In this document: positions 7,132 to 49,527 of the stretch, piece after piece | How the letters are laid out: the number at the start of each line of letters is the position of its first letter | Position numbering within the stretch: the first letter of the stretch is position 1 | Assembly (NCBI RefSeq): GCF_964188315.1 | Contig: NC_135656.1 | Span: forward strand, 67,022,001 to 67,086,000 | Reading direction: 5' to 3' | Source: Podarcis muralis | Lineage: Eukaryota | DNA: 64,000 bases | Position numbers and translations under genes: made by a program | Notes under the pieces: generated by a model | What the model was told of the DNA's origin: nothing | The model's database searches: none | The model's input: only the letters and a program-made list of their open reading frames with translations

Positions 7132-9999
7132 TTAGTCGTCAAATTTTCTGCAGTCTCCAAGGTTCCTCAGTCTAAGACGTCTTCTACTTTGTCTGATGCG
7201 GGAAAGACAATGCGAAGAACTCAGGATGAGAATTCAGAAGATGCAAGCTTCATTATTACTCATTAAACAGAAATAGTATTGGTGAGAAAGGTAAGTTCAT
7301 CATTGCTCTATTTCTCGGGGAAGGGAAATGGATGAGAAAGAATCCTGTCCAATAACCTGAAGAGATAGGGTTAAGTATAATTGCTTGATTCTACATTGAT
7401 TTAAAATAACTGCATGTGTATCCCTCAAGACATGGCATTGGAAGCTAAGAAAGAGCAACAGAATGCCTAACATTTAAATGATTAACTGAGAATGTATCTC
7501 TGCTACTCATCATGATCACATGGGGTATTCAATTGCAGATCTCCATTTTAGGTGTGTGAGTTGGTCTTTGTTTTTCTGAAAAAGGGCTGAAGAAATAGGA
7601 CCACTAATGACTCCCTGTCCAGGAGAAAATAGCCTCCAGGCTAATGGAGTCTGTGTGGAGAGAAAGAGCTTTGTTTCCAGCTCTGGGAAGAGTTATTTCA
7701 TATTTCTAAGATGTTAGGCCTGTGTTGGAACAAGCACATGATATTATGCGACTATTGGGTGTATCATTATTGTTTTGTGTCTGGTTTTGAACAAGTTCTG
7801 TTAGTAAAGCTTAAGAAACATATTTTTTGACTGGGCAAGGAAGACTGGGCAAGAAGAACCAGTTTTTATTCACCTATTGCTTCTAAAGAGCAATATTAAT
7901 AAACACAATAGCCGCTACCCATCAATCTAGACAATACTGAGCTGCATGGACCAGTGGCCTGACTCTGTATAAGGCAGATTCTTATGTTCATATGTTCTTT
8001 CCAGCACCACTGCTTGGTAAAACACCCCCATTTTCTAGCTTTCACTGTTCATCCATGTCAGAAGCTTCTGTAAGAGTATATGTTAAGACTTCTCACCAGA
8101 GCAATTCTGAGATCCACATTAGGGAAGCACCTAGTGTAAGCCTTTCCTACCTTCACAATAACTTTCTTATTACCCCCTAATTCCCTGATGGACCTTTGTG
8201 TTATTTTTCTTATGGGCCAACCTTACTACCTTTTGTGTCGTGATAGGCATGGTGGGGCACTTCAACACGATTACCCTTCTGACAGGGGCATCTCTGCTCC
8301 TTGGGGGTGGGGAAAGAGAGTGGTGAGGAGGTTGGTGGACTTGTAAAAGGGTAAAAGAGTATTGGGAAATGATCCATAATGAATTGGGGGGGGGGGATAT
8401 TTAAAAGTACCCCAACCCCCCCGAGTCCTTTCTGTTGGGGATGATTCAGAATGATATTCCCAGGTGTCAAAAAATGTTATTTATGTATGCTACTACTGCA
8501 GCCTGTGCTTTGTTAGCCCAAAAATGGAAAACAAGCAATGTCCCAACCAAAGACGAATGGAAACTTAAGTTGACAGAATATGCACGGCTTGCAGACATTT
8601 CCACCTCATAAGCAAAACCTGTACTCACATATACGCATTGCAGAAGGCACACTTGTTGCCATATGACATGCCATCAGAGCCACAGTGGGGATTGAATTCC
8701 AGAGTGCACTGTGGTTTTGGATATCCTCGACAATATCTCTACAGAGAGAGTAAATTTTACAGTATTATCCATTTTCTGGCAAATCTCATGTGGTTGCTTT
8801 TACCAATCAGGTCTTAGTTGCACATCAGGTTTTTCTTCTTTTAAGAAATCACAAACACACCCGCCCCCAAAATGAAGAGTACTGATAAAATGGGACAGGG
8901 CCGCAGTCTTATTTTTGCACAAAGCAAATCTGCTGAACTCAAAGGCGTCCTGCAAACATTGCAACCAACTATGCTGTGGAAGGACTGGCAAGGAGAGAGG
9001 CAGTGCAAAAGCCATCTGTGTAAACTCCAATAAAGTAGTAGAAGAAGAAGAGTTTGGATTTGATATCCCGCCTTTCACTCCCTTTAAGGAGTCTCAAAGC
9101 GGCTAACATTCTACTTTCCCTTCCTCCCCCACAACTAACACTCTGTGAGGTGAGTGGGGCTGAGAGACTTCAAAGAAGTGTGACTAGACCATAGTCACCC
9201 AGCAGCTGCATGCGGAGGAGCGGAGAGGCGAACCCGGTTCACCAGATTATGAGTCCACTGCTCCCAACCACTACACCATGAATTTGTCTAATCCCTTTCA
9301 ATGCCATCAAGGGTGTGTGTGTGTGTGGCTATCACTGCCTCCCGTGGGAGCGAGTTATATAGTTTAACCATGAGCTGCAGGAAAAAGCAATATTACACAT
9401 CTTGACAGCAAGTTATTAGGATGTTCTGTAATAAGAATAAATGACTGCCACTCACCCGTTCAAAACGTGCTTCAGTGACAACGGCTAGAATGAAAACATA
9501 CAAAATGTAAAAATTCCAAAGCAAATCTACATGTTGAATAATAGTCCATTTGAGAACAAGATACCCTTAATGAGGAGGGGAAGGTGGAGGCTACAACCTC
9601 CCCTCCAACCAAACAAAGGCTTACTCAATGCCTGACTTGCTTCTCCATTTGAAAACATTTGAAAAATGAGATATATTTTATCTTACATTTCCTTTGTTCT
9701 CTTAAAAGTTTGTTTATAGTGAGGTTTGGCAATATGCAGCTGAATTTAAATGTCCCTGATCAGTTGATGGGAAGAGAATCAAATCAAATCAAACTAGCTA
9801 ATCAGTTGACGATACTAATAAAGAAAACCCATTCAACTCCTAGCTGAACTGAAGCCCATTCTGTTGCTTTCAGTAGGGTGATAGAGTAAATCTCACATGA
9901 CAAGATATTCTTTCTCGTTCCTACTGACTAATTTCATATAGAAGCTTCCTTGAGAATAGCTACATCTGAGCATTCACAAGAATATGTGAGGGTTCAACA

Positions 10000-16155: not shown

Positions 16156-19100
16156 ATGAAGCCAAGCAGCTTTCTCCTCCTCACTCTGATGGTCTTCTTT
16201 TTGTACTCAGGTAAGTCATATTTCATATTGCAAAATTTCTCTTTCTCGGAGAGTTGTAGGGACCAAAGAATCCATGGACTATTCATGTCTTTAGATGAGT
16301 GTAGGAAGGCTCCACCTGTGTTGACAAAACCCAGTTAAAATCTCCTTGCAAACCATGGTGTTCACTGTCTGAAAGCTTGCGGAAGGAGGGGACATTGTTG
16401 TTAAGCATAGGGACACTGGGGGCAGGGACACACATCCCCCCAAACACACACACACTTGAACCTTCCCACGTTCTTTTGGACACTGAAACATGTCTGTTCT
16501 CAAGGTTCCTCCTATATGAAATTATACATGCCAGGATGAACCAGAATGAATGCCTTCCTATGTGAGATTTACTCTATCAAATAAAGATACTCTACATCAG
16601 GGCTCTACATTGCACAAGGCGCCCACCACTATTCACACAATAGGAGCCTTTTTGAAAACTGAGGCTCGAAACACTAATGCCCCCTAAAGCTACCATGTAC
16701 TCTCCTTTCTTCATGGTCTCCACGTGGCTCTTGTGACATAAAAAGTGGACCTAGCCATGATTCTTAACATGCAAAGCACCACAGCCGGGCATTCAAGGGA
16801 TATCAACAAAACTGGGTCCCAGTTAGTTATGGACTAAACCAGTATATACAGTTATTTGTATTTAGTATAGTTAACTGAACCATTTCCCATTGATTTGATT
16901 GTCTTCCTATCCATGCTCAGTGGCATTTAAAGGAAATTGTATATTGCCAAGGCAAATTATAGATGCATTTTTAGGATAACATAGGATGTACAAGATACAA
17001 TGCATCTCACTTTTCAGTTCCTAGAAATAAATGTTATCAAATAGGCTATTATTCAACATATGGAATTTCTAAACAATTTTCACATTTTCTGTGTTTTGCA
17101 TCTAGATGTTGTTGTGAAAGCAACATGGAAAGCGGTAAGTGGAAATCATTTATTCCTATGAAAGAACATGGACGTAGCACGGAGTTAAGATAAGTGAATA
17201 TATTTTTCNNNNNNNNNNNNNNNNNNNNNNNNNNNNNNNNNNNNNNNNNNNNNNNNNNNNNNNNNNNNNNNNNNNNNNNNNNNNNNNNNNNNNNNNNNNN
17301 NNNNNNNNNNNNNNNNNNNNNNNNNNNNNNNNNNNNNNNNNNNNNNNNNNNNNNNTTTAAAATAAGGCAACAAAAAAACATCAACACAAATATAACATAC
17401 AAGAGCTGGGGTTTTCCCAGGATTTTACATCTCTAGTCCCACCCATTTTTTTTAAAAAAGTTGGTGGTATTATTATTAGTTCCAGTTGCTACCCACAATT
17501 TATAAGAAAGTCTCAGCTTGCGTTCTGTAGTAGCCAAGTGGCGTTATTCTGTTATTACTAGGCAGACCGCCCAACCTTGCAGGCATATTATTTAGCCACT
17601 GTCTTAAGAATCCAGTCACTCACTGTGTTTTTTTTAAAAAAGTATTTATTTGCAAAAACAACCATCAAATGTGTCTAGCATGAAACCCCTAGAGCTGCCC
17701 ACTCACAATTTGGCAGGATTAATCTTCTCTAAAGGGGCTACCATGTCTGCAAATTTTGTTTCGCAGCGTGAAACACTTTGTACCTGTTCTAACCCTGCAA
17801 TATTTTAAAGTTTAAACTGTCTTGCATGAAATCCCTGGCACCGATGATCTATAATTTGACAGGTTTAAGCCCCCGAAATGGGGCCTTACCATGTCACCAA
17901 ATCACATGCCCCTAGTGGGAACTTGGAATGAATAGAGAACAACATTATCACACAATTCCCTGCTTGCCAGGACAATAAATCAGCATTTCCTGTGCTTGAA
18001 TGCACACCTTAATACAACACGTGTTGAATTGTCATTTGCATTCCTCATCTTTGCCTCATTATTAATCATGTCATAATCAGAAAGACCTTGTAGTCCAAAG
18101 GTTAAGTGGGGAGGACCTTTAAAACTGTTGTGTCCTTCATCTTCAGAAATATTGCAAAGGGTATCCAAACCCAGCATGCACCCTGGAGTACCTGGCCCAC
18201 TGCGGTTCTGATGGCAAGACCTATGGCAACAGGTGTCTCTTCTGCAATGCATATATGTGAGTATATCAAAGAATCATGCAGTCGGAAGGGACCCCAAGAG
18301 TCATGTATTCCAACCTCCTGGAATGCAGGAATCCTTTCCCCCCCTGATACATCTTTGTTGGAAGTTAAAAAGTACATGATTATATTTTCACTAAGCATGG
18401 TGAGATATAAATAAACGAAATAAAAAGAAATTGAGAATCAGCACCCATGTAGAAGGGAAAGTCAAGCGGGGGACGGACCCCTCCCCTGGGCAGTGCAGGA
18501 ATCATTTTGCACAACGTGGCGTTCTAAGCCATGGCCCTGAGTTTTGTGTTGCTTATGAGGCCCAAAGGAACATGGTGAGCAGAGCTAATCTGTAGGTAGC
18601 CCTGAATTTGAAGATGGAGTGGCTTGGGAGGGCTATTCAAATGCACCACCCTCCTGACACTCTTGTTGCTGCTGCTAAGAGTGTTGGGGGGGCAGGGGAT
18701 ATATGCCCAGAAGGGCTCTATCTCCATCCCACCAGGCCAGACTCAACGCAAAAGGTAGTAGGGTTGGCCCAGAAGAAAAATAACCAAAAAAGCCATCAGG
18801 GAATTAGGGGATAAAGGTAAAGGGACCCCTGACCATTAGGTCCAGTCGTGACCGACTCTGGGGTTGTGGTGCTCATCTCGCTTTATTGGCTGAGGGAGCC
18901 GGCATACAGCTTCCGGGTCATGTGGCCAGCATGACTAAGCCACTTCTGGTGCACCAGAGCAGCACACGGAAACACCGTTTACCTTCCCGCCGGAGCGGTA
19001 CCTATTTATCTACTTGCACTGTGACGTGCTTTTGAGCTGCTAGGTTGGCAGGAGCTGGGACCGAGCAACGGGAGCTCACCCCATCGCACAGATTTGAACT

Positions 19101-25008: not shown

Positions 25009-26391
25009 CTAGCCAACAGAGATTTCTCTTATTCATATTTCGGGGGTGGGGAGTTTAGATGTGGCTAGCATGAAAACCTATAGAAGCAGATGTCTGCAAT
25101 TTGGTAATGCAATTTCTTCTGAAGGGGCCACAGTGTCTCCTGATTTCAGACTCCCAATTCCCACATGCTCAAAACGAGAATCATATACAGGCCAATTTTT
25201 GATACAATGCAAGTCACTGATCTCGAATTGGATTAGGGACGGGCGTCCTATTGGGAAGACCCAGTTTTCTGAGTGCATGTTCTGAAAGTTGGGCAATAGG
25301 GGCAATACAGGATTCCTTTTGGTGTACCGACTTCCCTGCTGCACCAAGGATTCCCTGGCCAAGCTGCTTCAGGTCGTGGCGGATGTGCTCCTGGAGACAC
25401 CTAGTTTGGTTGTCCTAGGCAGAGGTGGAGCTAGCTGCTCCGGCACCCATAGCAGCGCACATACTGTGCACCCAGGGGAGGGGCAAGCATCGCAGGGCAA
25501 TTTATATACAGGCCAATTTGTGATACAATGCAAGTCTCTGGTCTCGAATCAGATTAGGGAAGAGCTACTGAAGCTATTAATATTACATTTATGGGAGCAA
25601 TAGGATGAATAAAAATGGACTCTTCTTGAAAAAAAATTGTCCAGTCCTCTTCTGCACAGCCTAACCTGCCTCGGGGATTTCCCAAATCCACCAGAGAAAT
25701 CAAGGATACACAGTGGGACCCCCAAGTGGGGAAAACAAGGAGGAGAGAAATCCCATTGCAATGACATTAATTCTTGAGCTAGTGCAAGGATGTAGCTGAA
25801 TACCACCTTGGGTGGCATATATCAATTTATATGGTGGTAATTGGATTTTCTATGTGTACTTTTATTTCTCTGCTTCTCTTTCTCATTTTCTTCCATTAAA
25901 AATCAATAGAAAAGAAAAGTATCATGGCAGGGTAATGGGTTCTAGCCTCAATGTCTAATTAATCACCTGGCTGTCAACAGGTGGTTTGGGGTTTTCTTAA
26001 TCTGCAGAAATCCATTGTCTGCAGTCAGAAGTGTTACAGTCCAGAGGGAGTAGATTAGGCTGATTGTTTAAAACTCAGTTCCTTGATTGTATGTTATGTA
26101 CTAATTCTTGCACTAATGCAAGGATGTAGCTGAATACTAACTTGGATGGCATATATAAATTCTGTCCTTAATATGTTTAAGAATAGATAAGACACAAGTA
26201 AATGTATGGGGAGTTTGATAATGTTGCTGAGCTTATTTATTGATGAACTAAATTAAGATGTTGCGAAGTATTCACTGGCTTACAGAGCATAACCAAAGAG
26301 AATAATGGAATTGGGGGGGGGGGTGATGCAATGAGTGAGGCTTGAAGAGAAATGGGACTTCTTCTGCAGATGTTCCATAGTCTTGTGCGTC

Positions 26392-29300
26392 TTAAACTTT
26401 TCTGCATTCTCCAAAGTGCATTAGTATCAGCTTTCTTTTCTGCATTCTGATGAGAAAAAAAGAAGTAAATAAATACGAGAATTCATAACATGTAAGTTTC
26501 CTTATAACTCATTAAAGATAAATACTATATAGGTGGGAAAACTAAGTTCATCATTGCCCTAAGTACTGGGGAGGGAAGGGGCTATGGAAGAATAATGTCT
26601 GAGTCGCTGGAGAGCTTCTGCCATTTGCCTAGACAATATCGAACAAGATGGACCAGTGTTCCTTTCAGCTCCACCGCTTGGTGGAAGATCCGTCTTCTCC
26701 ACCCTTCATTGTTGATCTGTGTCACAGAACATAGAACCGATTTGGGCATCTTTCCCCTGCCCTCTCCTCCCACAGGATCCCACTTAGCAGCAGCAACAAC
26801 AGTACTGTCAGGAGGGTGGTGCATGTGAACCCATTTGAGTTTAAAATTCAAGGCGGTCTACAGATTAGTTCTGCTCACATGTTCATTTGGGCCTCATATG
26901 CAACACATAACACACATTGTGCAAAAATTTTTTAAAAATTCCTGCATTGCAGGGGTTTGAACTAGATGATCTTTGTGGTCACTTCCGACTCTACAATTCT
27001 ATGGTTCCCTCCATTCTGAAGGAAATCAGCCCTGAGTGCTCACTGGAAGGACAGATCCTGAAGCTGAAGCTCCTATACTTTGACCACTTCATGAGAAGAG
27101 AATACTCCCTGGAAAAGACCCTGATGTTGGGAAAGATGGAGTGCCTGGCGTGCTTGGTCTATGGGGTCACAAAGAGTCGGACACGACTAAAGGACAACAA
27201 AATGATATACTCACATATATTCATTGCAGAAGTGACACCGGTTGCTATAGGTCTTGCCATCAGAACCGCAGTGGGCACGGTACTCCTCAGTGCATATGAC
27301 TTTTGGGTACCCTTGGCAATATTTCTGAAGAAAAAGGACACAGCACTTAATAAGGGCTCCTCTCCCCTTGATCTCTGGATTGCAAGGCCTTTCTGACTAT
27401 GACTTGCCTAATAATGAGGCACAGATGACAAATACACCAAGTGTTAATTTAAGATATGCATTCAAGCAGAGGAAAAGCTGCTTTATCATCCTGCCAAGCA
27501 GTGAACTGCATGATAATGTTGTTCCATATTCAACCCGAGTTACCACTGCTTCCAAAGACGGGTTGATGCTCCCAGACATGACATGTGTGTGGGTGTTTGT
27601 GTGTGATTCCTGTATTCAGTTTGTAGGAAGAGAATTTCAGCTCTGTTTTGCTTTAGTTAGTATTGCTCTTCCCACTATTAACAGGCTGGAAAGGGGCAGA
27701 AAGGTACTCCCATCTGAGGCTCTCCCAGCTCTTGGCAGGGAACGTGGATTATTTTTTGCCATTTGGACTCCGCCAGCTCCACACAGCAGTCCAGTGTTTA
27801 GGAGCCTTGGGGATTTACAGGACCTTGTATCCAGAAGAACCAGAAACTCTGGCACCCTGTGGCCACACACAGCTTTCTACTGGGGTAGTGCATGGACCCC
27901 ACCCCATTCAAATTGTGGCTCTGATTTATCTAAATTAGGCCTGCTTTGTTCCAGACTGATTTGGACCCCAAACCACCTGATCCAGAGCTGATTTTTATTA
28001 ATCTCCAGAATATCACAGACTTGCTTTGCCAAATAAAAATGCCAAAACTTTCATCGTCAAGGCATGAGATTTGGTTACATTATAACCCCTATATGGGGGA
28101 TTAAACCTGTTGAATTACAGACGGTCAATGCCGGGGTTTCATACAAGACATTTTAAAAGTTTAAAATGCTGCAGGGTTAAAACAGGTACAAAGTTTTTTT
28201 ACATTGTGACACGGAATTTGCAGATTACAGGTGGGTAGATCCAGGGGTTTCATACTCAACACATTTTACAGTTGCTTTAAAATACATCTTTAAAAATCCA
28301 CAGTGAGAGTCCAATCCTGCCAGTTCTCAAGAATATTATTATTCCTGATTTCATAAGACTGTGGCTAAATAATATGCCTGCAAGTTTGGGTGGTCTGTCT
28401 AATAATAATAAAATAACCCCACTAGGCTACTGCAGGACACAAGCTGGGACTAATAGCAACTGGAACTAATGTGAAAGTGTGGGGGGGGGGAGAGCTCTTT
28501 TTTGTTATATATATGCATATATGTTTCTGTTGCCTGTGTTTTTAATTCCATTTGAAAATATAATAAAAATCTACAGTAAATATAAATTCACTTTTCTTAA
28601 CTCCATGCCACTTTCATGTTCTATCTATTAGGGGTTACCGCCCACACACTTCCGCTGCGCTTTTCTGCTTGTGTGGCGGCATCTCGGTAAACCACTTCTT
28701 ACTGTTTGTAGCTGAGTTTTCCCCGGAGGCAGAGGACAAGAACAGGAGTCATACTCAAATCCACAGTCAAGAGCTTCTTTATTGCTTGGCTGGTTGCACA
28801 AGCATTTCTGATACTATTATATACAAGCTATTTACATTCCTTCTTTATCTCTCCAGCACGGTATAATCTCAGTCCAGTAATTAATCCTGACACAGCAAAA
28901 CTCACAGTATCAGCAGCACACATTTTCTTACTTCCAACCTTGTTGTCAGCATGCGTACTGACAGTGTGATGGCCTGGGATTCGGATTTGGATCCTGAACC
29001 TGAGGAATCCCAGCCTGCACAGGATTCCCCGCTTCCAGAACCAGCTGAGCTGGGGCTGGGGCATGAGCCTGAAGGGTCCTCACCTGTGCTGGATCCTCAG
29101 GTGCAGGCACCAGCTGAGTCTGCTCTGGCTCCTGAGGGGATGGAGGACCCATGACCTGCAGGTGCTCCACCCTCAGCCCTGTCAGAGGAAGCTGAGGTTG
29201 CCTCTGGGTCTGGTAACCCTCCAGCCTGTCCTGAGCTGCAGAGGCTCAGGGCAGAGAGGCGGAGGGAACTAAGTTCCCACAGGAAGAATGCTCACCTCCA

Positions 29301-30707
29301 GGCCAGGAGAGGCGAGTCTCCTGTGGATCGGGGCTGCCCTATGCCTCGGGGGAGATAAAAGCCAGCCAGCGCAGGCCCAAGTTGTGGGAGCAACATCATT
29401 GGTTGTCAGTACCAGCCTAACTTCCCTGCTGGAGCTCCTGACCTCACCCAATGCCCTGCCCTGCACCCAGCTTCGACTTCTACGGACTGCCGTAATTTTG
29501 CACCATTGACCTCAGACTGGACTCGGACCTTGCCTCTCGGTTAGCCCCCGGGACCAGCACAGACAGTGTGTGTGCTTTCCTCATGTGGAAATTGCAACCT
29601 TCAACTTCCTCCTTTTATTTGTACCTCCAGCTGACAACAATCAAGCCTAGAGTGCCACTCGCACACACTAAACAAAATTCTGGAACCCTCTTTAAAGCTT
29701 CAAGGAACTTTTATCTGCTTCTTAAAGAATATTTTCCTAACACAATCATAATATTTTGCACTTACCACTTCCCATAATGCTTTAACAGCAACATCTAGAA
29801 GCAAAACACAGAAAATGTAAAGTTATAAAGAAAATCCATATATTGAATAACAGTTCAAATTAGAACAGTTATTTCTAGGAACAGAAAATGAGCATTGTAT
29901 CTTCTACATCCTTTGTTATCCTGAAAGTACACCCATAATGTGGCTTGGAAATATGCAATTTACTTTAAATGTCACAGGGCATGGATTAGAAGATAATCAA
30001 ATCAATGGAAAATGGTGTAATCAGTTAAATAGGAATAACTGAATATACTGATTCATTTACTAGCTAACTGGGTACCAGTTTTTTTATTTCAGCGGAATAC
30101 CCAGCTGTGGTGCCGTGTGTGTTTAGAATTGTTCCCAAGTCCACTATTTATCTACAAGAGCCATGTAGAGATTGTGAAGGAAGCATGGTGTGTGGTGGTA
30201 GTAGCTTTAGGGGGCATTAATGTTTGAAGTCTCACCTCACAAAGAGGTTCCTATTGGGTGGAAAGTGCTGGGCACTATCTGGAATGAAGAGCCCTGACAG
30301 ATTGTGAATCTCACATGGCAAGACATTCATTCTGGTTCTTCCTGACATTTATCATTTCATGTAGGAGGAACCTTGAGAATAGACATGTTTCAGTATTCAA
30401 ATGAATATGGGAAAGGCTCAAGTGTGTGTGTGTGTTTTGGGGGGATGTGTGTCCCTATGTTTGACCAATGTCCTCTCCTTCATTTAGCTTTCAGACATTG
30501 AATACCAAGGTATTCAGGGAGATTTTAACTGGATTTAATTAACACAGGTGGAGCCTTCCTACACTCATCTGAAGACATGAATAGTCTATGGACTGTTTGG
30601 TCCCTACACCTCTCCAAGAAAGAGAACTTTTGCAATATGAAATATTACTCACCTGAGTACAAAAAGAAGACCATCAGAGTGAGGAGGAGAAAGCTGCTTG
30701 GCTTCAT
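26392..30707 (-). CDS. K3: secreted single-domain Kazal inhibitor (SPINK family), intact, P1=Glu
   Basis: Exons 30707-30653, 29794-29766, 27324-27215, 26446-26392, all GT-AG. Protein: [82 protein letters not shown]. Confidence 0.9.
27004..27201 (+). mobile_element. Internally deleted Bov-B 3' fragment in K3 intron 3
   Basis: [21 protein letters not shown]... then AGTCGGACACGACTAA...CAACAA. Lacks 104 bp relative to the 23416 copy. Confidence 0.88.
28626..29742 (-). mobile_element. Solo LTR (outer) in K3 intron 2, interrupted by a second solo LTR
   Basis: Absent from paralogous introns. Inverted termini TATTAGG...CCTAACA, near-TSD CTATC/CAATC, AATAAA on the minus strand at ~28777. Confidence 0.6.
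28965..29561 (+). mobile_element. 597-bp solo LTR (TG...CA) nested in the outer LTR
   Basis: TGTGATGG...CCAGCACA with exact 5-bp TSD GACAG at 28960-28964 and 29562-29566. TATA-like GATAAAAG at ~29354. Confidence 0.85.
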
Positions 30708-32546
30708 GATTTTGCTGGTGGGTTTGGATCTGTTGGTCTCTTAGTGCTTTTCCAAGCAGTAGATGCTTTTCAGATTCCACTGGTTACGATGAGGTATGGC
30801 ATCTCTTCCATGTATTTATGGAAGTTTCTGCAGCCTTGATGATGAAATCTCCCAATTTCTGAGAAATATTTACACGTGCAAATGTGATTATACAGGACTG
30901 CAATGTTTTCTGCCAGTTTTAATGGTTCCCCTTAAGTGCACATTCCCCGTGTGTGCACGAAATATTTGGCAACCAGATCCTTAGGAAATACGGCTTCTGA
31001 TGCAATGATGACATTGCTGTTACAGGTCACAAAAAATGAGGTACAAACAAAACAGTTTTAGAAATTCTGGGATTCTTTTGACCAAAGGCAATCATTTTAG
31101 CACAAAGAAAAACAAAGGAGCCTTACTCGTTCAGCATGTAAGTCATAAAATAAAAGAGGTATTGTTGTCCCAGAAAGCAATACAAACACATTATATACGT
31201 CAAACACACTTATTATCTTCAATTGTTTAAAACCACAGAAGTGGAAAACAAGAACAGAGAAAACAAGATTTGGTGATAGGAGAAAACAAGCCATGAATGT
31301 ATGGCGTGAGCATCTTGGATTTCCATTGTTTGAGGCCATTTTCTTCTGAACACAAGTTACTGGGAAAACAGCAGGCGGGTCCAGTGTTTTTGCCCTCAGG
31401 TCCTGCTTGCAGGCATCTCATACGTATCTGGTTGTCAGCTGTGAGAACAGGATGCTGGGACAGAAGAGACACGGGCATGATCCCACATCTTGGCCAATTT
31501 TGGAAACAATAAGCTGGCAGGAGAATGTCTGGACCTTGGGTCTGGAGAGTTTGGAGGGTTCCAAATCTTGGCAGAGCTATGTCCCACTTTGTCGCTCAAA
31601 GGAGCTTCCCCTGATCCTATGCATTTTTACTCAGCATTAAGCCTTATGAAGTAAGGATTCTCTTTCAAGGAAGAGTGAATAGGATTGAAGCCTGACACTT
31701 TATCAGATGTTTGCACAACATGGGGGTACTTCCTGCCTTTCCCTGCCATAAGCGGATATTCTGATGAGCAGTTGAGTTGCCTTCCAGTGGCAAAGGCTGA
31801 AGGATGGACACTATTTTCTCTGCTCTGTTGAGATTTCCTTGTGGAACAATACCTGTGAAATTGAGGAGCTCTTCTGCTTTTCTCTCTCACTAAAACAAGA
31901 TGGCTGCTGCCTCTCAAAGATGTCCTGAATGAACTGGGCAACTGGGCATATGCACCCAGGTGGGGAAAGCAAGGAGGAGAGAAATCCCATTTCATTAACA
32001 TTAATTCATATGATGGCAACTGAATTTTCAATGTGTACGTTTCTCTTATTTCTCTCTCTGTTTTTTTAAAATTTTCTTCTATTAAAAATCAATAGAAAAG
32101 AAAAGAAATGTATCATGTCAGGGGGGTGGGTCCTAGTCTCAGTCTCTAATCACCTGGCTGTGTACAGGTGTTTTGGGGGGAGTTTTTAATCTGCAGAACT
32201 CAATTGCCAGAACTCAGAAATGTCATACTCAAAAGGGAGAAGATTCTGCTGATTGTTTGACTCACTTCCTTGATTGTGCGTTATTAGTAAGAAACTTCAA
32301 CACCAATCTCTCGTCCAAATCATATAATATTTTATAGAATAGATAATACACAAATAAATGTATGGAGAGCTTGATAATGTTGTGGAGCTTATTTATTGAT
32401 AAACTGAATTAAGATGTTGCGAGATATTCAATGGCTCACAGAGCATAAGCAAAGCGAAGAATCGATTTTTTTTTGTAGTGAAATAATGAGTGAAGCTTGA
32501 ATAGAAATGGGACTTCCTTTGCAGAAGTTTCATAGTCTTGTGCATC

Positions 32547-35500
32547 TTAAGCTGCTATGCATTTTCCGAAGTATTCCAGTTTCAGCTTTCCTCCACTTTT
32601 GCTGATGAGAGAAAAAGAAGTAAGTAAATGTGAGAATTTGTAAGATGCAACTTTCATTATAACTCCTTAAAGAGAAATACTATATAGGTGGGAAAGCTTA
32701 TGCCATAATTGCTATGTGTCTTGGGACCGGCAAAGGGCTGAGGAAGAATCCGGTCAGAGACCCTGGAAAATTACTTCCCGTCAGCCTAGCCAATATTGAG
32801 CAAGAGGGACCAAAGCACTTTTCAGGTCTACCACTTTGGGGGAAGATTCCCCTTCTCCAGCCTTCACTGTACATCTGTGTCAAACTTCTCTAGCAGCAAA
32901 TGTTCAGACTTTTACCTAGTGCAATTTCAAGATCCACATTAAGGAAACACCTAGTGTAGGCCTTTGTTACCCTCAGAATAATGTTCTTATTACTCCCTGA
33001 TTCCCTGATGAGGATTTTTGTTATTTTTCTTCTGAGCCAACCCTACTACCTTTTGTGTTGTGTCGGTGTTGTGGGATGGGATAGTGTTGGGATGCTCCTA
33101 AGGAATTGAGGGCAATTGGTAAGCCCCCAGCTGTCCCCAACCCATGGGCCAACATGCCAGTCGAACTCCAGTCCTTTGTGCAGCATGAATCTGCGACCCA
33201 GAGCTTCAGAAGTTCAGAAGCTGGACACACAACTCAGCAGAGTAAACACACAACAGAAGTGGCAGGGAGAGGCTGTGTAAAGCATATTTACAAGCAGTTT
33301 ATTCAGCATACATCAGGACAAAAGGAAAAACATGTCTTCTCCCCTTCATGTCGAAAAGCAAGCAGCTTAAGCAATAGCTACACACAAACGGAAGTTCCCA
33401 GCAAGTTGTGCTGGAGTGTAAACAGGCATGTGACACACAACAGTCATGCCTGTTCCTCTTAAGGTGGAATGCAATATTCTAACAGATAGAGCCCATTTGG
33501 GGATATTTCCCCTCCCCATCCCCCTGGATCGCTCTTAGCAGCAGCAACAAGAGTGTCAGGAGGGTGGTGCATGTGAATAGCCCTCCCAAGCCACTCCATC
33601 TTCAAATTTAGGGCTACCTACAGATTAGCTCCGCTCACCATGTTCCTTTGGGCCTCATAAACAAGACAAAACTCAGGGCCATGGGATGGAACCCCACATT
33701 GTGCAAAATGATTCCAGCACTGCCCGGGGGGGGGGGGTGTCCCCCGCTTGACTTTCCCTTCTACATGGGTGCTGATTCTCAATTTCTTTTTATTTCGTTT
33801 ATTTACATCTCACCATGCTGAGTGCAAATATAATCATTTACTTTTTAACTTCCAACAAATATGTCTGAGAGGGAAAAAAAAGATTCCTGCACTCCAGGAG
33901 GTTGGACTACATGACTCTCGGGGTCCCTTTAGACTGCATTATTCTATGATATACTCACAAATATGCATCGCAGAAGTCACACTGGTTGCCATAGGTCTCG
34001 CCATCAGAACCGCAGTGGGGACGTTTCTCAAAGATGCATGCTGGGTTTGGATGCCCTTTGCAATATTCCTGAAGACGAAGGACACAACACTTTTAAAGGT
34101 CCTCCCCACTTAACCTTTGGACTGCAAGGCCTTTCTGATTATGACATGATTAATAATGAGGCAAAGATGAGGAATGCAAATGACAATTCAACAAGTGTTG
34201 TATTAAGGTGTGCATTCAAGCACAGGAAATACTGATTTATTGTCCTGGCAAGCAGGGAATTGTGTGATAATGTTGTTCTCTATTCATCCTAAGTTCCGAC
34301 TCAGGGGGTTGAAACCTGTCAAATTGTAGATCGTCGGTGCTAGGGATTTCATGCAAGACACCTTAAAGTTTAAAATATTGCACAGGTACCTGTAGAACAG
34401 GTACAAAGTTTTTCACACTGCCAAACAAAATTTGCAGACATGGTAGTCCCTTCAGCGAAGATTAATCCTGCCAGGTTGCGAGTGGGCAGCTCCAGGGGTT
34501 TCATGCTAGACACATTTAACGGTTGTTTTTGCAAATAAATACTTTTAAAAAACACACAGTGAGTGCCTGAATTCATAAGACAGTGGCTAAATAATATGCC
34601 TGCAAGGTTGGGCGGTCTGTATAGTAATAACAGAATAACCCCAGTAGGCTACTACAGAACACAAGCTGAGACTTTCTTACAAATTGTGGGTAGCAACTGG
34701 AACTAATAATAATTCCACCGCCTTTTTTAAAAAAAGGAATGGGACTAGAGATGTGAAATCCTGAGGAAAACCCCAGCTCTTGTATGTTATATTTGTGTCG
34801 ATGTGTTTTTGTTGTCTGTATTATAAATTCTGTTTTAAAAATTGACACACACACACACAGAAACACACAGAGAATATTTTAAAATTCCACAAGAAATATA
34901 AATTCACTTATCTTAACTCCATGCTACTTCCATGTTCTATCATAAGAATAAATGATTTCCCACTTACCTCTTCCAAGGATGCTTTAACAACAACATCTAG
35001 ATGCAAAACACAGAAAATGTGAAAATGATTTAGCAAATCCGTATGTTGAATAATAGCCCATTTGATAACATTTATTTCTAGGAACTGAATAGTGAGATGC
35101 ATTGTATCTTGTACATCCTATGTTATCCTAAAAGTGCCTTGGCAACATGCAATTTCCTTTAAATGCCACTGAGCATGGATAGGAAGACAATCAAATCAAT
35201 GGGAAATGGTTCAGTCCGTTAACTACACTAAATACAAATAACTGTATATACTGGTTTAGTCCATAACTAACTGGGACCCAGTTCTGTTGATTTCCCTTGA
35301 ATGCCTGGCTGTGGTGCTTTGCGTGTTTAGAATCATGGCTAGGTCCACTTTTTATGTCAGAAGAGCCACGTGGAGACCATGAAGAAAGGAGGGAGCATGG
35401 TAGCTTCAGGGGACATTAGTGTTTTGAGCCTCGTCTTTCAAAAAGGCTCCTATGGTGTGAATAGTGGTGGGCGCCTTGTGTAGTGTAGAGCCCTGATGTA

Positions 35501-38945: not shown

Positions 38946-41900
38946 TTAAGCTTTTTTGCATTTTCCATAGTATTTCAGTTTCAGGTTTCCTCCACTTTTG
39001 CTGATGAGAAAAAAAGAAGTAAATAAATATGAGAATTCATAAGTTGCAGCTTTCATTATAACTCCTTAAAGAGAAATACTATATAGATGGGAAAGCTTAT
39101 GCCATCACTGCTCTGTGTCTTGGGGACGGGAAAGGGCTGAGGAAGAATCCTGTCTGAGACCCGGGAAAACAGCTTCCTGTCAGCCTAGCCAATATTGAGC
39201 CAGAAGGACCAATGTCCTTTTCGGGTCTATCACTTTGGGGAAGATTCCCCTTCTCCAGCCTTCACTGTACATCTGTGTCAAACTTCTCTAGCAGCAAATG
39301 TTCAGACTTTTACCTAGTGCAATTTCAAGATCCACATTAAGGAAACACCTAGTGTAGGCCTTTGTTACCTTCAGAATAATGTTCTTATTACCCCCTGATT
39401 CCCTGGTGAGGATTTTTGTTATTTTTCTTCTGTGCCAACCCTACTACCTTTTGTGTTATGTCTGGTATTGTGGGATGGGATAAGTGTTGGGATGCTCCTA
39501 AGGATTTGAGGGCAATTGGTAAGCCCCCAGCTGTCCCCAACCCACGGGCCAACATGCTGGTCGAACTCCAGTCCTTTGTGCAGCATGAATCTGCGACCCA
39601 GAGCTTCAGAAGTTCAGAAGCTGGACACACAACTCAGCAGAGTAAACACACAACAGAAGTGGCAGGGAGAGGCTGTGTAAAGCATATTTACAAGCAGTTT
39701 ATTCAGCATACATCAGGACAAGAGGAAAAACATGTCTTCTCCCCTTCATGTCCAAAAGCAAGCAGCTTAAGCAATAGCTACACACAAACAGAAGTTCCCA
39801 GCAAGTTGTGCTGGAGTTTAAACAGGCATGTGACACACAACAGTCATGCCTGCTCCTCTTAAAGTGGAATGGAATATTCTAACAGATAGAGCCCGTTTGG
39901 GGATATTTCCCCTCCCCATCCCCCTGGATCGCTCTTAGCAGCAGCAACAAGAGTGTCAGGAGGGTGGTGCATGTGAATAGCCCTCCCAAGCCACTCCATC
40001 TTCAAATCAGGGCTACCTACAGATTAGCTCCGCTCACCATGTTCCTTTGGGCCTCATAAACATGACAAAACTCAGGAGAGGGGTGTCCCCCCACTTGACT
40101 TTCCCTTCTACATGGGTGCTGATTCTCTTTTTCTTTTCCGTTCTTTTATTTACATCTCACCATGCTTAGTGCAAATATAATCATGTACTTTATAACTTCC
40201 AACAAAGATGTCTGAGAGGGAAAAAAAGATTCCTGCACTCCAGGAGGTTGGAATACATGACTCTTGGGGTCCCTTTAGACTGCATGATTCTTTGATATAC
40301 TCACATATATGCATTGCAGAATTCACACTGGTTGCCATAGGTCTTGCCATCAGAACCACAGTGGGGATGGTATTCCAAGGTGCATCCTGGTTTTAGATAC
40401 CCTTTGCAATATTCCTGAAGACAAAGGACACAACAGTTTTAAAGGTCCTCCCCACTTAACCTTTGGACTGGAAAGCCTTTCTGATTATCACATGCCTAAG
40501 AAAGAGGCAAAGATGAGGAATGCAAATGACAATTCAACAAGTGTTATATTAAGGTGTGCATTAAAGCACAGAGAAATGCTGATTTATCGTCTTGGCAAGG
40601 AGTGAATTGTGTGATAAAGTTGTTCTCTATTCATCCCAAGTTCCCACTTGGGGCATATGATTTGGTGACATGGTAAGGCCCCATTGCGGGGGCTTAAACC
40701 TGTCAAATTGTAGATAATCAGTGCCTGGGATTTCATGCAAAACACCTTTAAAGTTTAAAATATTGCAGGGTTAGAACAGGTACAAAGTTTTTCAAACTGC
40801 GAAACAAAATTTGCAGACATGGTAGTCCCTTCAGGGAAGATTAATCCTGCCAAATTGTGAGTGAGCAGCTCCAGGGGTTTCATGCTAGACACATTTAATG
40901 GTTGTTTTTGCAAATAAATACTTTTTAAAAACACGCAGTGAGTGCCTGAATTCATAAGACAGTGGCTAAATAATATGCCTGCAAGGTTGGGCGGTCAGCC
41001 TAGTAATAACAGAATAACCCCAGTAGGCTACTACAGAACACAAGCTGAGACTTTCTTACAAATTGTGGGTAGCAACTGGAACTAATAATAATACCACCAA
41101 CTTTTTTTAAAAAGGGATGGGACTAGATATGTGTAATCATGGGAAAAACCCAACTCTTGTATGTTATATTTGTGCCAATGTGTTTTTGTTGCCTGTATTT
41201 TAAATTCTGTTTTCAAAATTGACACACACAGAAACGTTCAGAGAGAGAGAGAGAGGAGAGAGAATATTTTAAAATCCACAAGAAAAATAATTTCACTTAT
41301 CTTAACTCCACGGTACTTCCACGTTCTATCATAAGAATAAATGATTTCCCACTTACCGCTTCCCATGTTGCTTTCACAACAACATCTAGATGCAAAACAC
41401 AGAAAATGTGAAAATTATTTAGAAATTCCATATGTTGAATAATAGTCTATTTGATAACATTTACCCCTTCATGGATCACTGCCTTGCTGTGGCGAAGGAG
41501 CTTGAATAACTCAGAGAAGCTATGAGCTATGCCGTGCAGGGCCACCCAAGATGGACAGGTCATAGTGGAGAGTTTTGACCAAATGTGATCCACCTGGAGC
41601 AGGAACCGGCAAGCCACTCCAGTATCCCTGCCAAGAAAACTCCATGGACAAAGACAAAAGGCATATAAAAGTTATGACGCTGGAAGATAAGCCCCTCAGG
41701 TCGGAAGGCGTCCAACATGCTACTGAGGAAGAGCGGAGGACAAGTACAAGTAGATTCAGAGCTGATGAAGCGGCTGGGCCAAAGCCGAAAAGACGCTCAG
41801 TTGCGGATATGCCTGGAAGCGAAAGGAAAGTCCAATGCTGTAAAGAAAAATATTGCATAGGAACCTGGAATGTAAGAACCATGAACCTTGGTAAGTTGGA

Positions 41901-48500: not shown

Positions 48501-49527
48501 TCCTCTTAAGATGGAATGGAATATTCTAACAGATGGGCCATTTGGGCCTATTTCCCCTCCCCACCCCCCTGGATCACTCTTAGCAGCAGCAACAAGAGTG
48601 TCAGGAGGGTGGTGCATGTGAATAGCCCTCCCAAGCCACTTCATCTTCAAATTCAGGGCTACCTACAGATTAGCTCTGCTCACCATATTCCTTTGGGCCT
48701 CATAAACAAGACAAAACTCAGGGCCATGGGCTAGAACCCCACATTGTGCAAAATGATTCCAGCACTGCCCGGGGGGGGGGGTGTCCCCCGCTTGACTTTC
48801 CCTTCTACATGGGTGCTGATTCTCAATTTCTTTTTATTTCATTTATTTACATCTCACCATGCTTAGTGAAAATATAATCATGTACTTTTTAACTTCCAAC
48901 AAAGATGTCTGAGAGGGAAAAAAAGATTCCTGCACTCCAGGAGGTTGGACTACATGACTCTCGGGGTCCCTTTAGACTGCATGATTCTATGATATACTCA
49001 CAAATATGCATTGCAGAAGTCACACTGGTTGCCATAGGTCTCGCCATCAGAACCGCAGTGGGGACGTTTCTCAAAGATGCATGCTGGGTTTGGATGCCCT
49101 TTGCAATATTCCTGAAGATGAAGGACACAACACTTTTAGAGGTCCTCCCCACTTAACCTTTGGACTGCAAGGCCTTTCTGATTATGACATGCCTAAGAAA
49201 GAGGCACAAATGAGGAATACACCAAGTGTTATATTCAGTTATGCATTCAAGCACAGGAAATGCTGATTCATCGTCCTGGCAAGCAGGGAATTGTGTGATA
49301 ATGTTGTTCTCTATTCATCCCAAGTTCCCTCTTGGGGCATGTGATTCGGTGACATGGTAAGGCCCCATTGTGGGTGCTTAAACTTGTCAAATTATAGATT
49401 GTCGGTGCCAGGGATTTCATGCAAGACACCTTTAAAGTTTAAAATACTGCAGGGTTAGAACAGGGACAAAGTTTTTCACACTGCCAAACAAAATTTGCAG
49501 ACATGGTAGCTCCTTCAGGGAAGATTA

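What the first reader, a model, noticed from the sequence alone, without database searches (positions are those of the whole stretch)
27215..27324. K3 has an acidic P1 (Glu), a rare Kazal specificity
Codon 13 of exon 3 (27288-27286) is GAG, two nucleotides away from the CTG (Leu) of K2. It comes with PKVI before Cys2 and a remodelled C-terminus ([14 protein letters not shown]). A P1 Leu-to-Glu change in ovomucoid domain 3 is known to redirect it to a Glu-specific bacterial protease. Inference: K3 may target microbial glutamyl endopeptidases or an acid-specific host protease, or may have lost inhibitory function.
Basis: partly seen in the sequence, partly recalled or inferred. Interest (0 to 1): 0.72.

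Follow-up and report, generated by a model that had tools for sequence, protein, structure and literature searches.

The report
Lizard Kazal inhibitor with glutamate P1
One of seven tandem copies of a small secreted protease-inhibitor gene in the wall lizard really does carry glutamate at its specificity-determining position; this is a conserved, uncommon but already known kind of Kazal variant whose target protease and site of expression are still unknown.

Summary
Window 27324-27215 (minus strand) is exon 3 of an intact four-exon, 82-codon Kazal gene (K3). Codon 13 (27288-27286) is GAG and sits at P1, two residues after Cys2.

The window is Podarcis muralis, not a mammal. K3 is one of seven tandem "ovomucoid-like" single-Kazal genes, with P1 Leu (3 copies), Phe (3) and Glu (1).

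The Glu is not an error or a private variant:
- An independent run of the species shows the same exon.
- The syntenic Zootoca vivipara orthologue and an older P. muralis protein model both read CTEEY.

P2-P3' (TEEYR) is identical to the engineered turkey ovomucoid third-domain Glu18 variant (PDB 1SGE/2SGE), which is the best single-domain PDB match. The modelled orthologue overlays OMTKY3 at 0.5-0.7 Å.

Exon 3 is more conserved between orthologues than its flanking intron (p=0.004). Between paralogues the loop diverges faster than the intron.

Acidic P1 occurs in about 6% of related domains (Glu 4%) and arose independently in snakes. P1 Glu is known in other Kazals, where it goes with subtilisin inhibition.

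Three RNA-seq runs of unknown tissue gave no K3 reads, so expression and target remain untested. This is a new member of a known kind, of modest interest.

The parts
30653..30707 (-). K3 exon 1 coding part: ATG, signal-peptide-like [18 protein letters not shown], plus the first base of a split codon; donor gtgagt
   Evidence: 91% mean identity with the same region of the six paralogues and Zootoca K3
30812..30820 (-). TATA-like CATAAATAC about 100 nt upstream of the ATG, conserved in K2, K5, K7 and Zootoca K3
   Evidence: consensus match only, function not tested
29766..29794 (-). K3 exon 2 (29 nt; completes Asp, then VAVKALWEV); acceptor tag|, donor |gtaagt
   Evidence: same length and position as in Zootoca P0001
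27215..27324 (-). K3 exon 3 (the finding): Cys1 to Cys5 of the Kazal domain with the reactive-site loop
27286..27288 (-). P1 codon GAG (Glu), second residue after Cys2
   Evidence: unchanged in run X6 and in Zootoca L001
26392..26446 (-). K3 exon 4 coding part: completes Ile, then [17 protein letters not shown] and TAA; holds Cys6
26236..26241 (-). AATAAA about 155 nt after the stop codon (candidate polyadenylation signal)
   Evidence: sequence match only
26884..27203 (.). High-copy repeat inserted 12 nt into K3 intron 3; absent from Zootoca K3 and from K2. All RNA reads laid on the stretch fall here and come from other copies
8629..8738 (-). Paralogue K1 exon 3, loop CTLEFNPH (P1 Leu)
18147..18256 (+). 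Paralogue K2 exon 3, loop CTLEYLAH (P1 Leu, CTG); the only plus-strand copy, tail to tail with K3
33959..34068 (-). Paralogue K4 exon 3, loop CIFEKRPH (P1 Phe); upstream neighbour of K3, as in Zootoca
40305..40414 (-). Paralogue K5 exon 3, loop CTLEYHPH (P1 Leu)
49002..49111 (-). Paralogue K6 exon 3, loop CIFEKRPH (P1 Phe); its exon 1 carries a stop codon
56684..56793 (-). Paralogue K7 exon 3, loop CIFEKRPH (P1 Phe); the conserved Tyr after Cys3 is Asn

Best explanation
K3 is an intact member of a lacertid-specific tandem array of seven single-domain, secreted, classical Kazal inhibitor genes. Databases name them 'ovomucoid-like'; the nearest mammalian kin are SPINK6 and the submandibular double-headed inhibitors. 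The array evolves by duplication plus rapid change of the enzyme-contact loop. K3 is the copy whose P1 became Glu, and that state has been kept since before the Podarcis-Zootoca split.

Inferred mechanism: K3 acts as a standard-mechanism (canonical, substrate-like) inhibitor. Its loop K-V-I-C-T-E-E-Y-R presents Glu to the S1 pocket. It should therefore bind tightly only to serine proteases that accept an acidic P1. These are Glu-specific chymotrypsin-fold enzymes of the Streptomyces griseus GluSGP / staphylococcal type, and subtilisin-like enzymes. It should be weak against trypsin, chymotrypsin and elastase at neutral pH.

Shown here: gene integrity, P1 identity, conservation, fold, identity of P2-P3' with the Glu18 variant of turkey ovomucoid third domain, and loop hypervariability among paralogues.

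Inferred, not shown: secretion, inhibition, the target enzyme, the tissue.
For: - Gene model: four exons, all introns GT..AG, 249 nt giving 82 codons, with a conserved TATA-like box and an AATAAA.
- Family: Kazal_1 at E=6e-13. Cys spacing is 7/7/10/2/17, as in ovomucoid third domain.
- Closest structure: the best single-domain PDB sequence match is 1SGE/2SGE, the Glu18 variant of OMTKY3, with identical T-E-E-Y-R.
- Fold: the AlphaFold model of the Zootoca orthologue has pLDDT 90+ over the Kazal core. It overlays OMTKY3 complexes at 0.5-0.7 Å over 49 residues, TM 0.9.
- Orthology: Zootoca has the same order and orientation (Phe-type gene, then the CTEEYRAH gene, then an opposite-strand gene).
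- Conservation between orthologues: exon 3 shows dN 0.023, dS 0.169, and 5/110 differences against 35/232 in the flanking intron (p=0.004).
- Divergence between paralogues: loop codons differ more than the intron against the Phe-type copies (p=0.008-0.02). The scaffold differs less.
- Recurrence: CTEEY or acidic P1 also occurs in snake paralogues (Pituophis, Ahaetulla, Liasis, Candoia). A tree places them apart from the lacertid genes, and an AU test rejects one clade at p=0.012. Recurrent origin argues that the state is useful.
- Literature: P1-Glu Kazal domains inhibit subtilisin, for example CrSPI-1 domain 2 with Ki 2.5 nM (PMC3082530).
- From my own memory, not checked here: Komiyama et al. 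1991, J Biol Chem 266:10727, reported that Leu18 to Glu18 makes OMTKY3 a strong inhibitor of GluSGP.
Against: - No K3 exon is covered in three bulk RNA-seq runs of the species. Their tissue is unknown, and expression of the other paralogues in those runs was not tested.
- Over the whole coding sequence, K3 against Zootoca gives dN/dS 0.88, not different from 1. Exon 4 has about 7.5 non-synonymous and 0.5 synonymous changes. Constraint is therefore shown only for exon 3, and on small counts.
- A repeat has been inserted 12 nt into intron 3 in Podarcis. Its effect on splicing is unknown.
- No full-length Podarcis K3 product came back from the protein collection. Only a partial model appeared, starting in intron 2.
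- No vertebrate Glu-specific serine protease target is known to me.
- No binding constant could be computed, because the additivity tables were not available.
Confidence: 0.55

Rival explanations
1. K3 is a decaying or silent duplicate. The Leu-to-Glu change took it off its former targets, and it now drifts with no function as an inhibitor.
For: - No RNA reads on any K3 exon in three runs.
- Whole-gene dN/dS is 0.88 against Zootoca, with fast non-synonymous change in exon 4.
- A repeat sits next to the exon 3 donor.
- The array does contain decaying copies: K6 has a stop in exon 1 and K7 has lost the conserved Tyr.
Against: - The reading frame, all six Cys, all six splice sites, the promoter-like region and the AATAAA are intact in Podarcis, and the frame is intact in Zootoca.
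- Exon 3 is significantly more conserved than the intron (p=0.004). The whole coding sequence has 16/240 differences against 35/232 in the intron (p=0.004).
- 11 of 12 contact positions are identical between the two genera.
- The same acidic P1 arose and persisted independently in snakes.
Confidence: 0.17
2. K3 is a pH-switched inhibitor of ordinary hydrophobic-pocket proteases (chymotrypsin- or elastase-like). It is weak when Glu is charged at neutral pH. It is strong when Glu is protonated in an acidic compartment or secretion.
For: The Glu18 variant of OMTKY3 binds Streptomyces griseus proteinase B with strong pH dependence. Single P1 substitutions change binding by up to 3-4 orders of magnitude with pH (PMC3601434; PDB entries 1SGE and 2SGE, same sequence; 1SGE is titled pH 6.5). 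K3 has the same P2-P3'.
Against: Nothing here points to an acidic site of action. The paralogues with Leu or Phe already cover such enzymes without needing a switch.
Confidence: 0.1
3. K3 has a role other than protease inhibition, for example a signalling or pheromone-like secreted peptide. The Kazal fold would then be only a stable scaffold.
For: Fast change of surface residues in exon 4. Lineage-specific expansion with copy differences between Podarcis species, as seen in reproductive or chemosensory protein families.
Against: The most conserved part between orthologues is exactly the canonical loop and its supports: Thr17, Glu19, Tyr20, Arg21 and Asn33 in ovomucoid numbering. That is what an inhibitor needs.
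Confidence: 0.06

Closest known systems
Turkey ovomucoid third domain, engineered Glu18 variant (PDB 1SGE / 2SGE)
   Same: Classical Kazal domain with identical Cys spacing and no gaps over the domain. P2-P3' T-E-E-Y-R is identical, and P6 Lys and P15' Asn are the same. It is the best single-domain PDB match, and the predicted fold overlays at 0.7 Å.
   Different: The variant is laboratory-made, from the third of three domains of a bird egg-white protein. K3 is a natural, separately encoded single domain of a lizard. K3 differs at P5 (Val for Pro), P4 (Ile for Ala), P14' (Ser for Gly) and P18' (His for Asn), and in the helix and C-terminal surface.
Ovomucoid first domain as given in PDB chain 1YU6_C
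   Same: A natural vertebrate Kazal domain whose loop reads C-T-E-D, so Glu occupies the P1 position (alignment).
   Different: It is part of a three-domain protein. The match to K3 is much weaker (18 bits). Its activity was not looked up here.
Invertebrate and oomycete Kazal domains with acidic P1 (horseshoe-crab CrSPI-1 domain 2, shrimp SPIPm2 domains, Phytophthora EPI1)
   Same: Glu at P1 in a canonical Kazal loop. They are reported as tight subtilisin inhibitors acting in host-microbe contests (PMC3082530; PMC1236909).
   Different: They are non-classical or atypical Kazal domains with other Cys spacing, often multi-domain, and only distantly related in sequence.
Snake 'ovomucoid-like' paralogues with CTEEY or acidic P1 (P0018 Pituophis, P0020 Ahaetulla, P0035 Liasis, P0031 Candoia)
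   Same: Same family, same gene size and same loop C-T-E-E-Y.
   Different: They fall in the snake clade, apart from the lacertid genes. One clade is rejected at p=0.012. They have a different signal peptide start (MKQG) and a different C-terminal part. None has been characterised, as far as the held literature shows.
Mammalian SPINK6 / bull seminal plasma inhibitor IIA
   Same: Single classical Kazal domain with the same exon plan. They are next-best PDB sequence matches after ovomucoids (2N52, 1BUS), and many SPINK6 entries appear among the profile hits.
   Different: The SPINK6-named sequences were not inspected one by one here; Arg is one of the commonest P1 residues among the relatives tallied (43 of 164). 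The match to K3 is weaker than that of ovomucoid third domain (36-37 against 46-49 bits). They are not part of a seven-gene array.

Membership tests
Classical Kazal inhibitor domain (Pfam PF00050) | Profile match above the curated cutoff | tested here: met
   Exon 3 alone scores 49 bits, E=6.1e-13, against a cutoff of 21
Classical Kazal inhibitor domain (Pfam PF00050) | Six Cys with classical spacing (7, 7, 10, 2 and 17 residues between them) | tested here: met
   Read from exon 3 and exon 4 translations; identical to ovomucoid third domain
Classical Kazal inhibitor domain (Pfam PF00050) | Conserved loop supports: Thr at P2, Glu at P1', Tyr at P2', Tyr after Cys3, Asn at P15' | tested here: met
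   C-T-E-E-Y-R ... K-T-Y-S-N in K3, aligned to OMTKY3 variants
Classical Kazal inhibitor domain (Pfam PF00050) | Kazal fold (short three-stranded sheet plus one helix) | tested here: met
   Tested on the Zootoca orthologue, not on the window's own joined product: pLDDT 90+ in the core, 0.5-0.7 Å to OMTKY3
Classical Kazal inhibitor domain (Pfam PF00050) | Secreted: cleavable signal peptide | tested here: inconclusive
   Exon 1 encodes a hydrophobic N-terminus conserved in all copies. No signal-peptide predictor was available
Classical Kazal inhibitor domain (Pfam PF00050) | Tight, reactive-site-dependent inhibition of a serine protease | not testable with these tools
   Needs recombinant protein
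Ovomucoid proper | Three tandem Kazal domains in one polypeptide | tested here: not met
   K3 is an 82-codon precursor with one domain. 'Ovomucoid-like' is a database name by similarity only
Inhibitors of Glu-specific serine proteases (OMTKY3-Glu18 type) | Glu at P1 of a canonical loop on an ovomucoid-third-domain-like scaffold | tested here: met
   GAG at 27288-27286; P2-P3' identical to 1SGE/2SGE
Inhibitors of Glu-specific serine proteases (OMTKY3-Glu18 type) | Measured inhibition of a glutamyl endopeptidase | not testable with these tools
   The published measurement for the engineered variant is recalled from memory. The paper was not in the library
Pseudogene | Frame disruption, lost Cys or lost splice sites | tested here: not met
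   All intact in K3. By contrast, K6 has a stop in exon 1
Pseudogene | No transcription | tested here: inconclusive
Zero reads on K3 exons in three RNA-seq runs of unknown tissue.

The most novel reading that the evidence does not exclude
Acidic-P1 'ovomucoid-like' inhibitors arose independently in lacertid lizards and in snakes, and were then kept. This would point to a shared selective agent that has not yet been identified. One candidate is Glu-specific or subtilisin-type secreted proteases of skin, egg or cloacal microbes of squamates. Another is an unrecognised acid-specific serine protease of squamates themselves. K3 would then be a natural, ready-made probe for that enzyme.
Probability: 0.22. 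Interest if true: 0.55.

Novelty: new member of a known kind. Interest (0 to 1): 0.35.

Why it matters
The case is a clean natural example of a textbook principle. Duplicated canonical inhibitors diversify at their enzyme-contact residues while the scaffold, signal peptide and promoter stay nearly fixed.

K3 also reproduces in nature the Leu18-to-Glu18 swap that was engineered into turkey ovomucoid third domain. Its specificity can therefore be predicted from existing measurements and tested quickly.

The independent appearance of the same C-T-E-E-Y loop in snakes suggests a recurrent target worth finding. None of the squamate ovomucoid-like genes appears to have been studied in the literature I could search.

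It does not open a new kind of mechanism.

Tried and rejected
1. Ruminant origin. My first guess came from a BovB-like repeat next to the exon. It was rejected when the closest proteins proved to be lacertid and the window matched P. muralis GCA_964188315.1 exactly.

2. Numerical specificity prediction. [quoted passage not shown] The paper (DOI and PMC29270) is not held, so no constants were computed.

3. Literature on the Glu18 variant and GluSGP. Four searches found nothing usable (one search was irrelevant). That claim stays marked as memory.

4. Literature on lizard or Podarcis Kazal genes. Nothing specific was found.

5. Intron-flank tree to date the K3 duplication. It was unresolved, partly because of the repeat insertion in K3.

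6. Orthology of the Lacerta agilis gene P0003 (P1 Leu) to K3 or K2. This could not be settled, because no Kazal gene lies within 10 kb upstream of it.

7. Earlier findings of this scan. None for this place or these words.

8. The large representative-protein search was not run.

9. The P. raffonei locus L004 did not reach K3.
Full report
**What is at the coordinates**

On the minus strand, 27324-27215 is an exon bounded by cag| and |gtgagt. It reads [36 protein letters not shown] plus two bases of a split codon. Codon 13, at 27288-27286, is GAG. It is the second residue after the second Cys, which is the P1 position of a Kazal reactive-site loop. The exon alone matches Pfam Kazal_1 at E=6.1e-13.

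**The gene**

I read K3 exon by exon.
- Exon 1 coding part, 30707-30653: ATG, then [18 protein letters not shown], then one base of a split codon.
- Exon 2, 29794-29766.
- Exon 3, 27324-27215.
- Exon 4 coding part, 26446-26392, ending in TAA.

All three introns (858, 2441 and 768 nt) are GT..AG. The sum is 249 nt, or 82 codons. A TATA-like CATAAATAC lies about 100 nt upstream of the ATG and is conserved in the paralogues. An AATAAA lies about 155 nt after the stop. The spacing of the six Cys (7, 7, 10, 2 and 17 residues between them) is that of ovomucoid third domain.

**Whose genome, and the array**

The window is not mammalian. The closest proteins are lacertid 'ovomucoid-like' entries. A locus fetched for one of them, L003, is identical to the window apart from the window's masked stretch. 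L003 comes from Podarcis muralis GCA_964188315.1, record OZ076955.1. I did not read or print the letters under the masked N run 17209-17355.

The window holds seven paralogous genes.

| Copy | Exon 3 | Strand | Loop | P1 |
|---|---|---|---|---|
| K1 | 8738-8629 | minus | CTLEFNPH | Leu |
| K2 | 18147-18256 | plus | CTLEYLAH | Leu |
| K3 | 27324-27215 | minus | CTEEYRAH | Glu |
| K4 | 34068-33959 | minus | CIFEKRPH | Phe |
| K5 | 40414-40305 | minus | CTLEYHPH | Leu |
| K6 | 49111-49002 | minus | CIFEKRPH | Phe |
| K7 | 56793-56684 | minus | CIFEKRPH | Phe |

Two copies look damaged. K6 has a stop at codon 18 of exon 1. K7 has Asn for the conserved Tyr after Cys3.

**Is the Glu real and kept?**

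A contig of an independent run of the species (X6) spans 27164-28662. It differs from the window at 27510 and 28132 but not in exon 3.

The Zootoca vivipara protein P0001 reads C-T-E-E-Y-R-A-H. Its gene lies in the same context as K3: a Phe-type CIFEKRPH gene upstream on the same strand and an opposite-strand gene downstream.

An older P. muralis model, P0002, also reads C-T-E-E-Y but has His instead of Arg at P3'.

Between window and Zootoca:
- Exon 3 has 5 differences in 110 nt against 35 in 232 nt of the flanking intron (Fisher p=0.004). Here dN is 0.023 and dS is 0.169.
- Over the whole coding sequence dN/dS is 0.88, not different from 1. This is because exon 4 carries about 7.5 non-synonymous changes and 0.5 synonymous.
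- The coding sequence as a whole is still less diverged than the intron: 16/240 against 35/232, p=0.004.

Constraint is therefore shown for the loop-bearing exon, on small numbers, and not for the C-terminal surface.

**Diversification among paralogues**

Promoter-like region, 5' UTR and signal-peptide exon average 91% column identity across the seven copies and Zootoca K3. Within exon 3 the pattern splits in two.
- The 13 loop codons of K3 are only 59-69% identical to the other copies, against 75-79% for the adjacent intron. Against the three Phe-type copies this excess is significant (p=0.008-0.02).
- The rest of the exon is 87-93% identical, more conserved than the intron.

Pairwise dN/dS for K3 against K4 and K6 is about 1.5, with no synonymous change outside the loop. 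This is the classic reactive-site hypervariability of canonical inhibitors.

**What it resembles**

Against all PDB sequences, the best single-domain match to the exon is the Glu18 variant of turkey ovomucoid third domain (1SGE/2SGE). T-E-E-Y-R is identical at P2 to P3'. The match is stronger than to mammalian SPINK6 or bull seminal inhibitor IIA.

In ovomucoid numbering the K3 contact set is: P6 Lys, P5 Val, P4 Ile, P3 Cys, P2 Thr, P1 Glu, P1' Glu, P2' Tyr, P3' Arg, P14' Ser, P15' Asn, P18' His. It differs from the engineered variant only at P5, P4, P14' and P18'.

The 'remodelled' C-terminus keeps Leu48, Leu50, Phe53, Gly54 and Cys56 and touches no contact position.

I folded the Zootoca orthologue with the family alignment, because the window's own joined product has no reference. 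The model has pLDDT 90 or more over the Kazal core. It overlays OMTKY3 in its enzyme complexes at 0.5-0.7 Å over 49 residues.

**How rare is P1 Glu?**

In the 120 best relatives from a profile search I counted P1 in 164 Kazal domains: Met 46, Arg 43, Leu 31, Lys 23, Glu 7, Phe 3, Ala 3, Asp 3, others 5. So Glu is uncommon at 4%, but not unique.

The other Glu or Asp cases include snake paralogues with the same C-T-E-E-Y loop (Pituophis, Ahaetulla, the python Liasis) and Asp in a boa. On a protein tree the lacertid genes and the snake genes separate. Acidic P1 needs at least two and up to four changes. An AU test rejects a single clade of the Zootoca and colubrid C-T-E-E-Y proteins at p=0.012. 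That group was named after seeing the tree, which weakens the test.

Elsewhere:
- The ovomucoid chain in PDB 1YU6 shows C-T-E-D in its first domain.
- The literature states that several Kazal domains with P1 Glu inhibit subtilisin, with Ki 2.5 nM for horseshoe-crab CrSPI-1 domain 2 (PMC3082530).
- The pH dependence of the Glu18 variant's binding to proteinase B is documented second-hand in PMC3601434.
- That Glu18 turns OMTKY3 into a strong GluSGP inhibitor is my recollection of Komiyama et al. 1991. I could not check it here.

**Expression**

Three bulk RNA-seq runs of the species were sampled at about 12% each. Their tissue is not known to me. They put no read on any K3 exon. All laid reads fall on the high-copy repeat at 26884-27211 and continue into unlike sequence, so they come from other copies.

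This does not show silence. Only one reads call was allowed, so I could not ask whether any paralogue is expressed in those samples.

K3 is a called 82-residue gene in the source assembly. However, no full-length Podarcis K3 protein came back from the protein collection. Only a partial model appeared, whose first exon lies in intron 2. In Podarcis, but not Zootoca, a repeat has been inserted 12 nt into intron 3.

**Verdict**

The Glu is genuine, is conserved between two genera, and sits on a fully canonical scaffold.

The most likely function is a standard-mechanism inhibitor directed at proteases that accept an acidic P1: Glu-specific chymotrypsin-fold enzymes and/or subtilisin-like enzymes, most plausibly microbial. 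Rivals are a silent or decaying copy, a pH-switched inhibitor, and a non-inhibitory role.

The phenomenon belongs to well-known kinds: reactive-site hypervariability and acidic-P1 Kazals. I therefore rate it a new member of a known kind, with modest interest. Two things raise it somewhat: the independent recurrence of the same loop in snakes, and the exact match to a much-studied engineered variant.

**Limits and rules followed**

The joined K3 protein was never typed or sent to a search or fold; exons were used by reference and orthologues by protein id. The masked N run was left alone.

Noticed in passing
window 53445-53447 (K6 exon 1, minus strand): TAA stop at codon 18 of the signal-peptide exon of the Phe-type copy K6, where all other copies have TCA. 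K6 is probably a pseudogene unless it borrows another first exon.
   Followed up: partly
window 56716-56718 (K7 exon 3, minus strand): The Tyr that follows Cys3 in the G-S-D-G-K-T-Y motif is Asn in K7. This position is invariant in the 15 relatives aligned.
   Followed up: no
window 27274-27276 (K3, P3' codon CGT): The older P. muralis protein model P0002 has His here where the window and run X6 have Arg. This is a within-species difference at an enzyme-contact residue.
   Followed up: partly
window 30653-30880 and the matching regions of K1-K7: Promoter-like region, 5' UTR and signal-peptide exon average 91% column identity across the seven copies and Zootoca K3. That is higher than for exon 3 overall (86% mean among K2-K7) and well above its reactive-loop codons (75%). 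Two promoter subtypes are visible: CATAAATAC in K2, K3, K5, K7 and CTATATAT in K1, K4, K6.
   Followed up: partly
window 26884-27211: A high-copy repeat with a BovB-like tail sits 12 nt into K3 intron 3. It is absent in Zootoca K3 and in K2. It is abundantly present in RNA-seq reads on both strands, all coming from other copies.
   Followed up: partly
L004 12403-12516 and 24050-24163 (Podarcis raffonei): The P. raffonei array holds copies with loop C-T-R-E-L-N-P-H (P1 Arg). These have no counterpart in the P. muralis window, so copy content differs between congeners.
   Followed up: no
proteins P0018, P0020, P0031, P0033, P0035 (snakes): A set of snake paralogues whose signal peptide starts MKQG carries Glu or Asp at P1, in colubrids, a python and a boa. 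Other MKQG proteins (Liasis P0024, P0026) have Lys or Ala, and the acidic ones do not form one clade on the tree. P0014 (Pituophis) has C-D-E-C with two extra Cys.
   Followed up: partly
window 17209-17355: A masked N run lies in intron 2 of K2, between its exon 1 and exon 3. The fetched locus L003 is the same genome and spans it. I only saw a mismatch count equal to the run's length and did not read or print the letters.
   Followed up: no
L001 20069-20182 (Zootoca, minus strand): The gene downstream of Zootoca K3 (87 residues, loop C-T-L-E-L-Q-R-M) is much more divergent than P. muralis K2, which holds the same position. The tail-to-tail neighbour may not be orthologous between the genera.
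   Followed up: no
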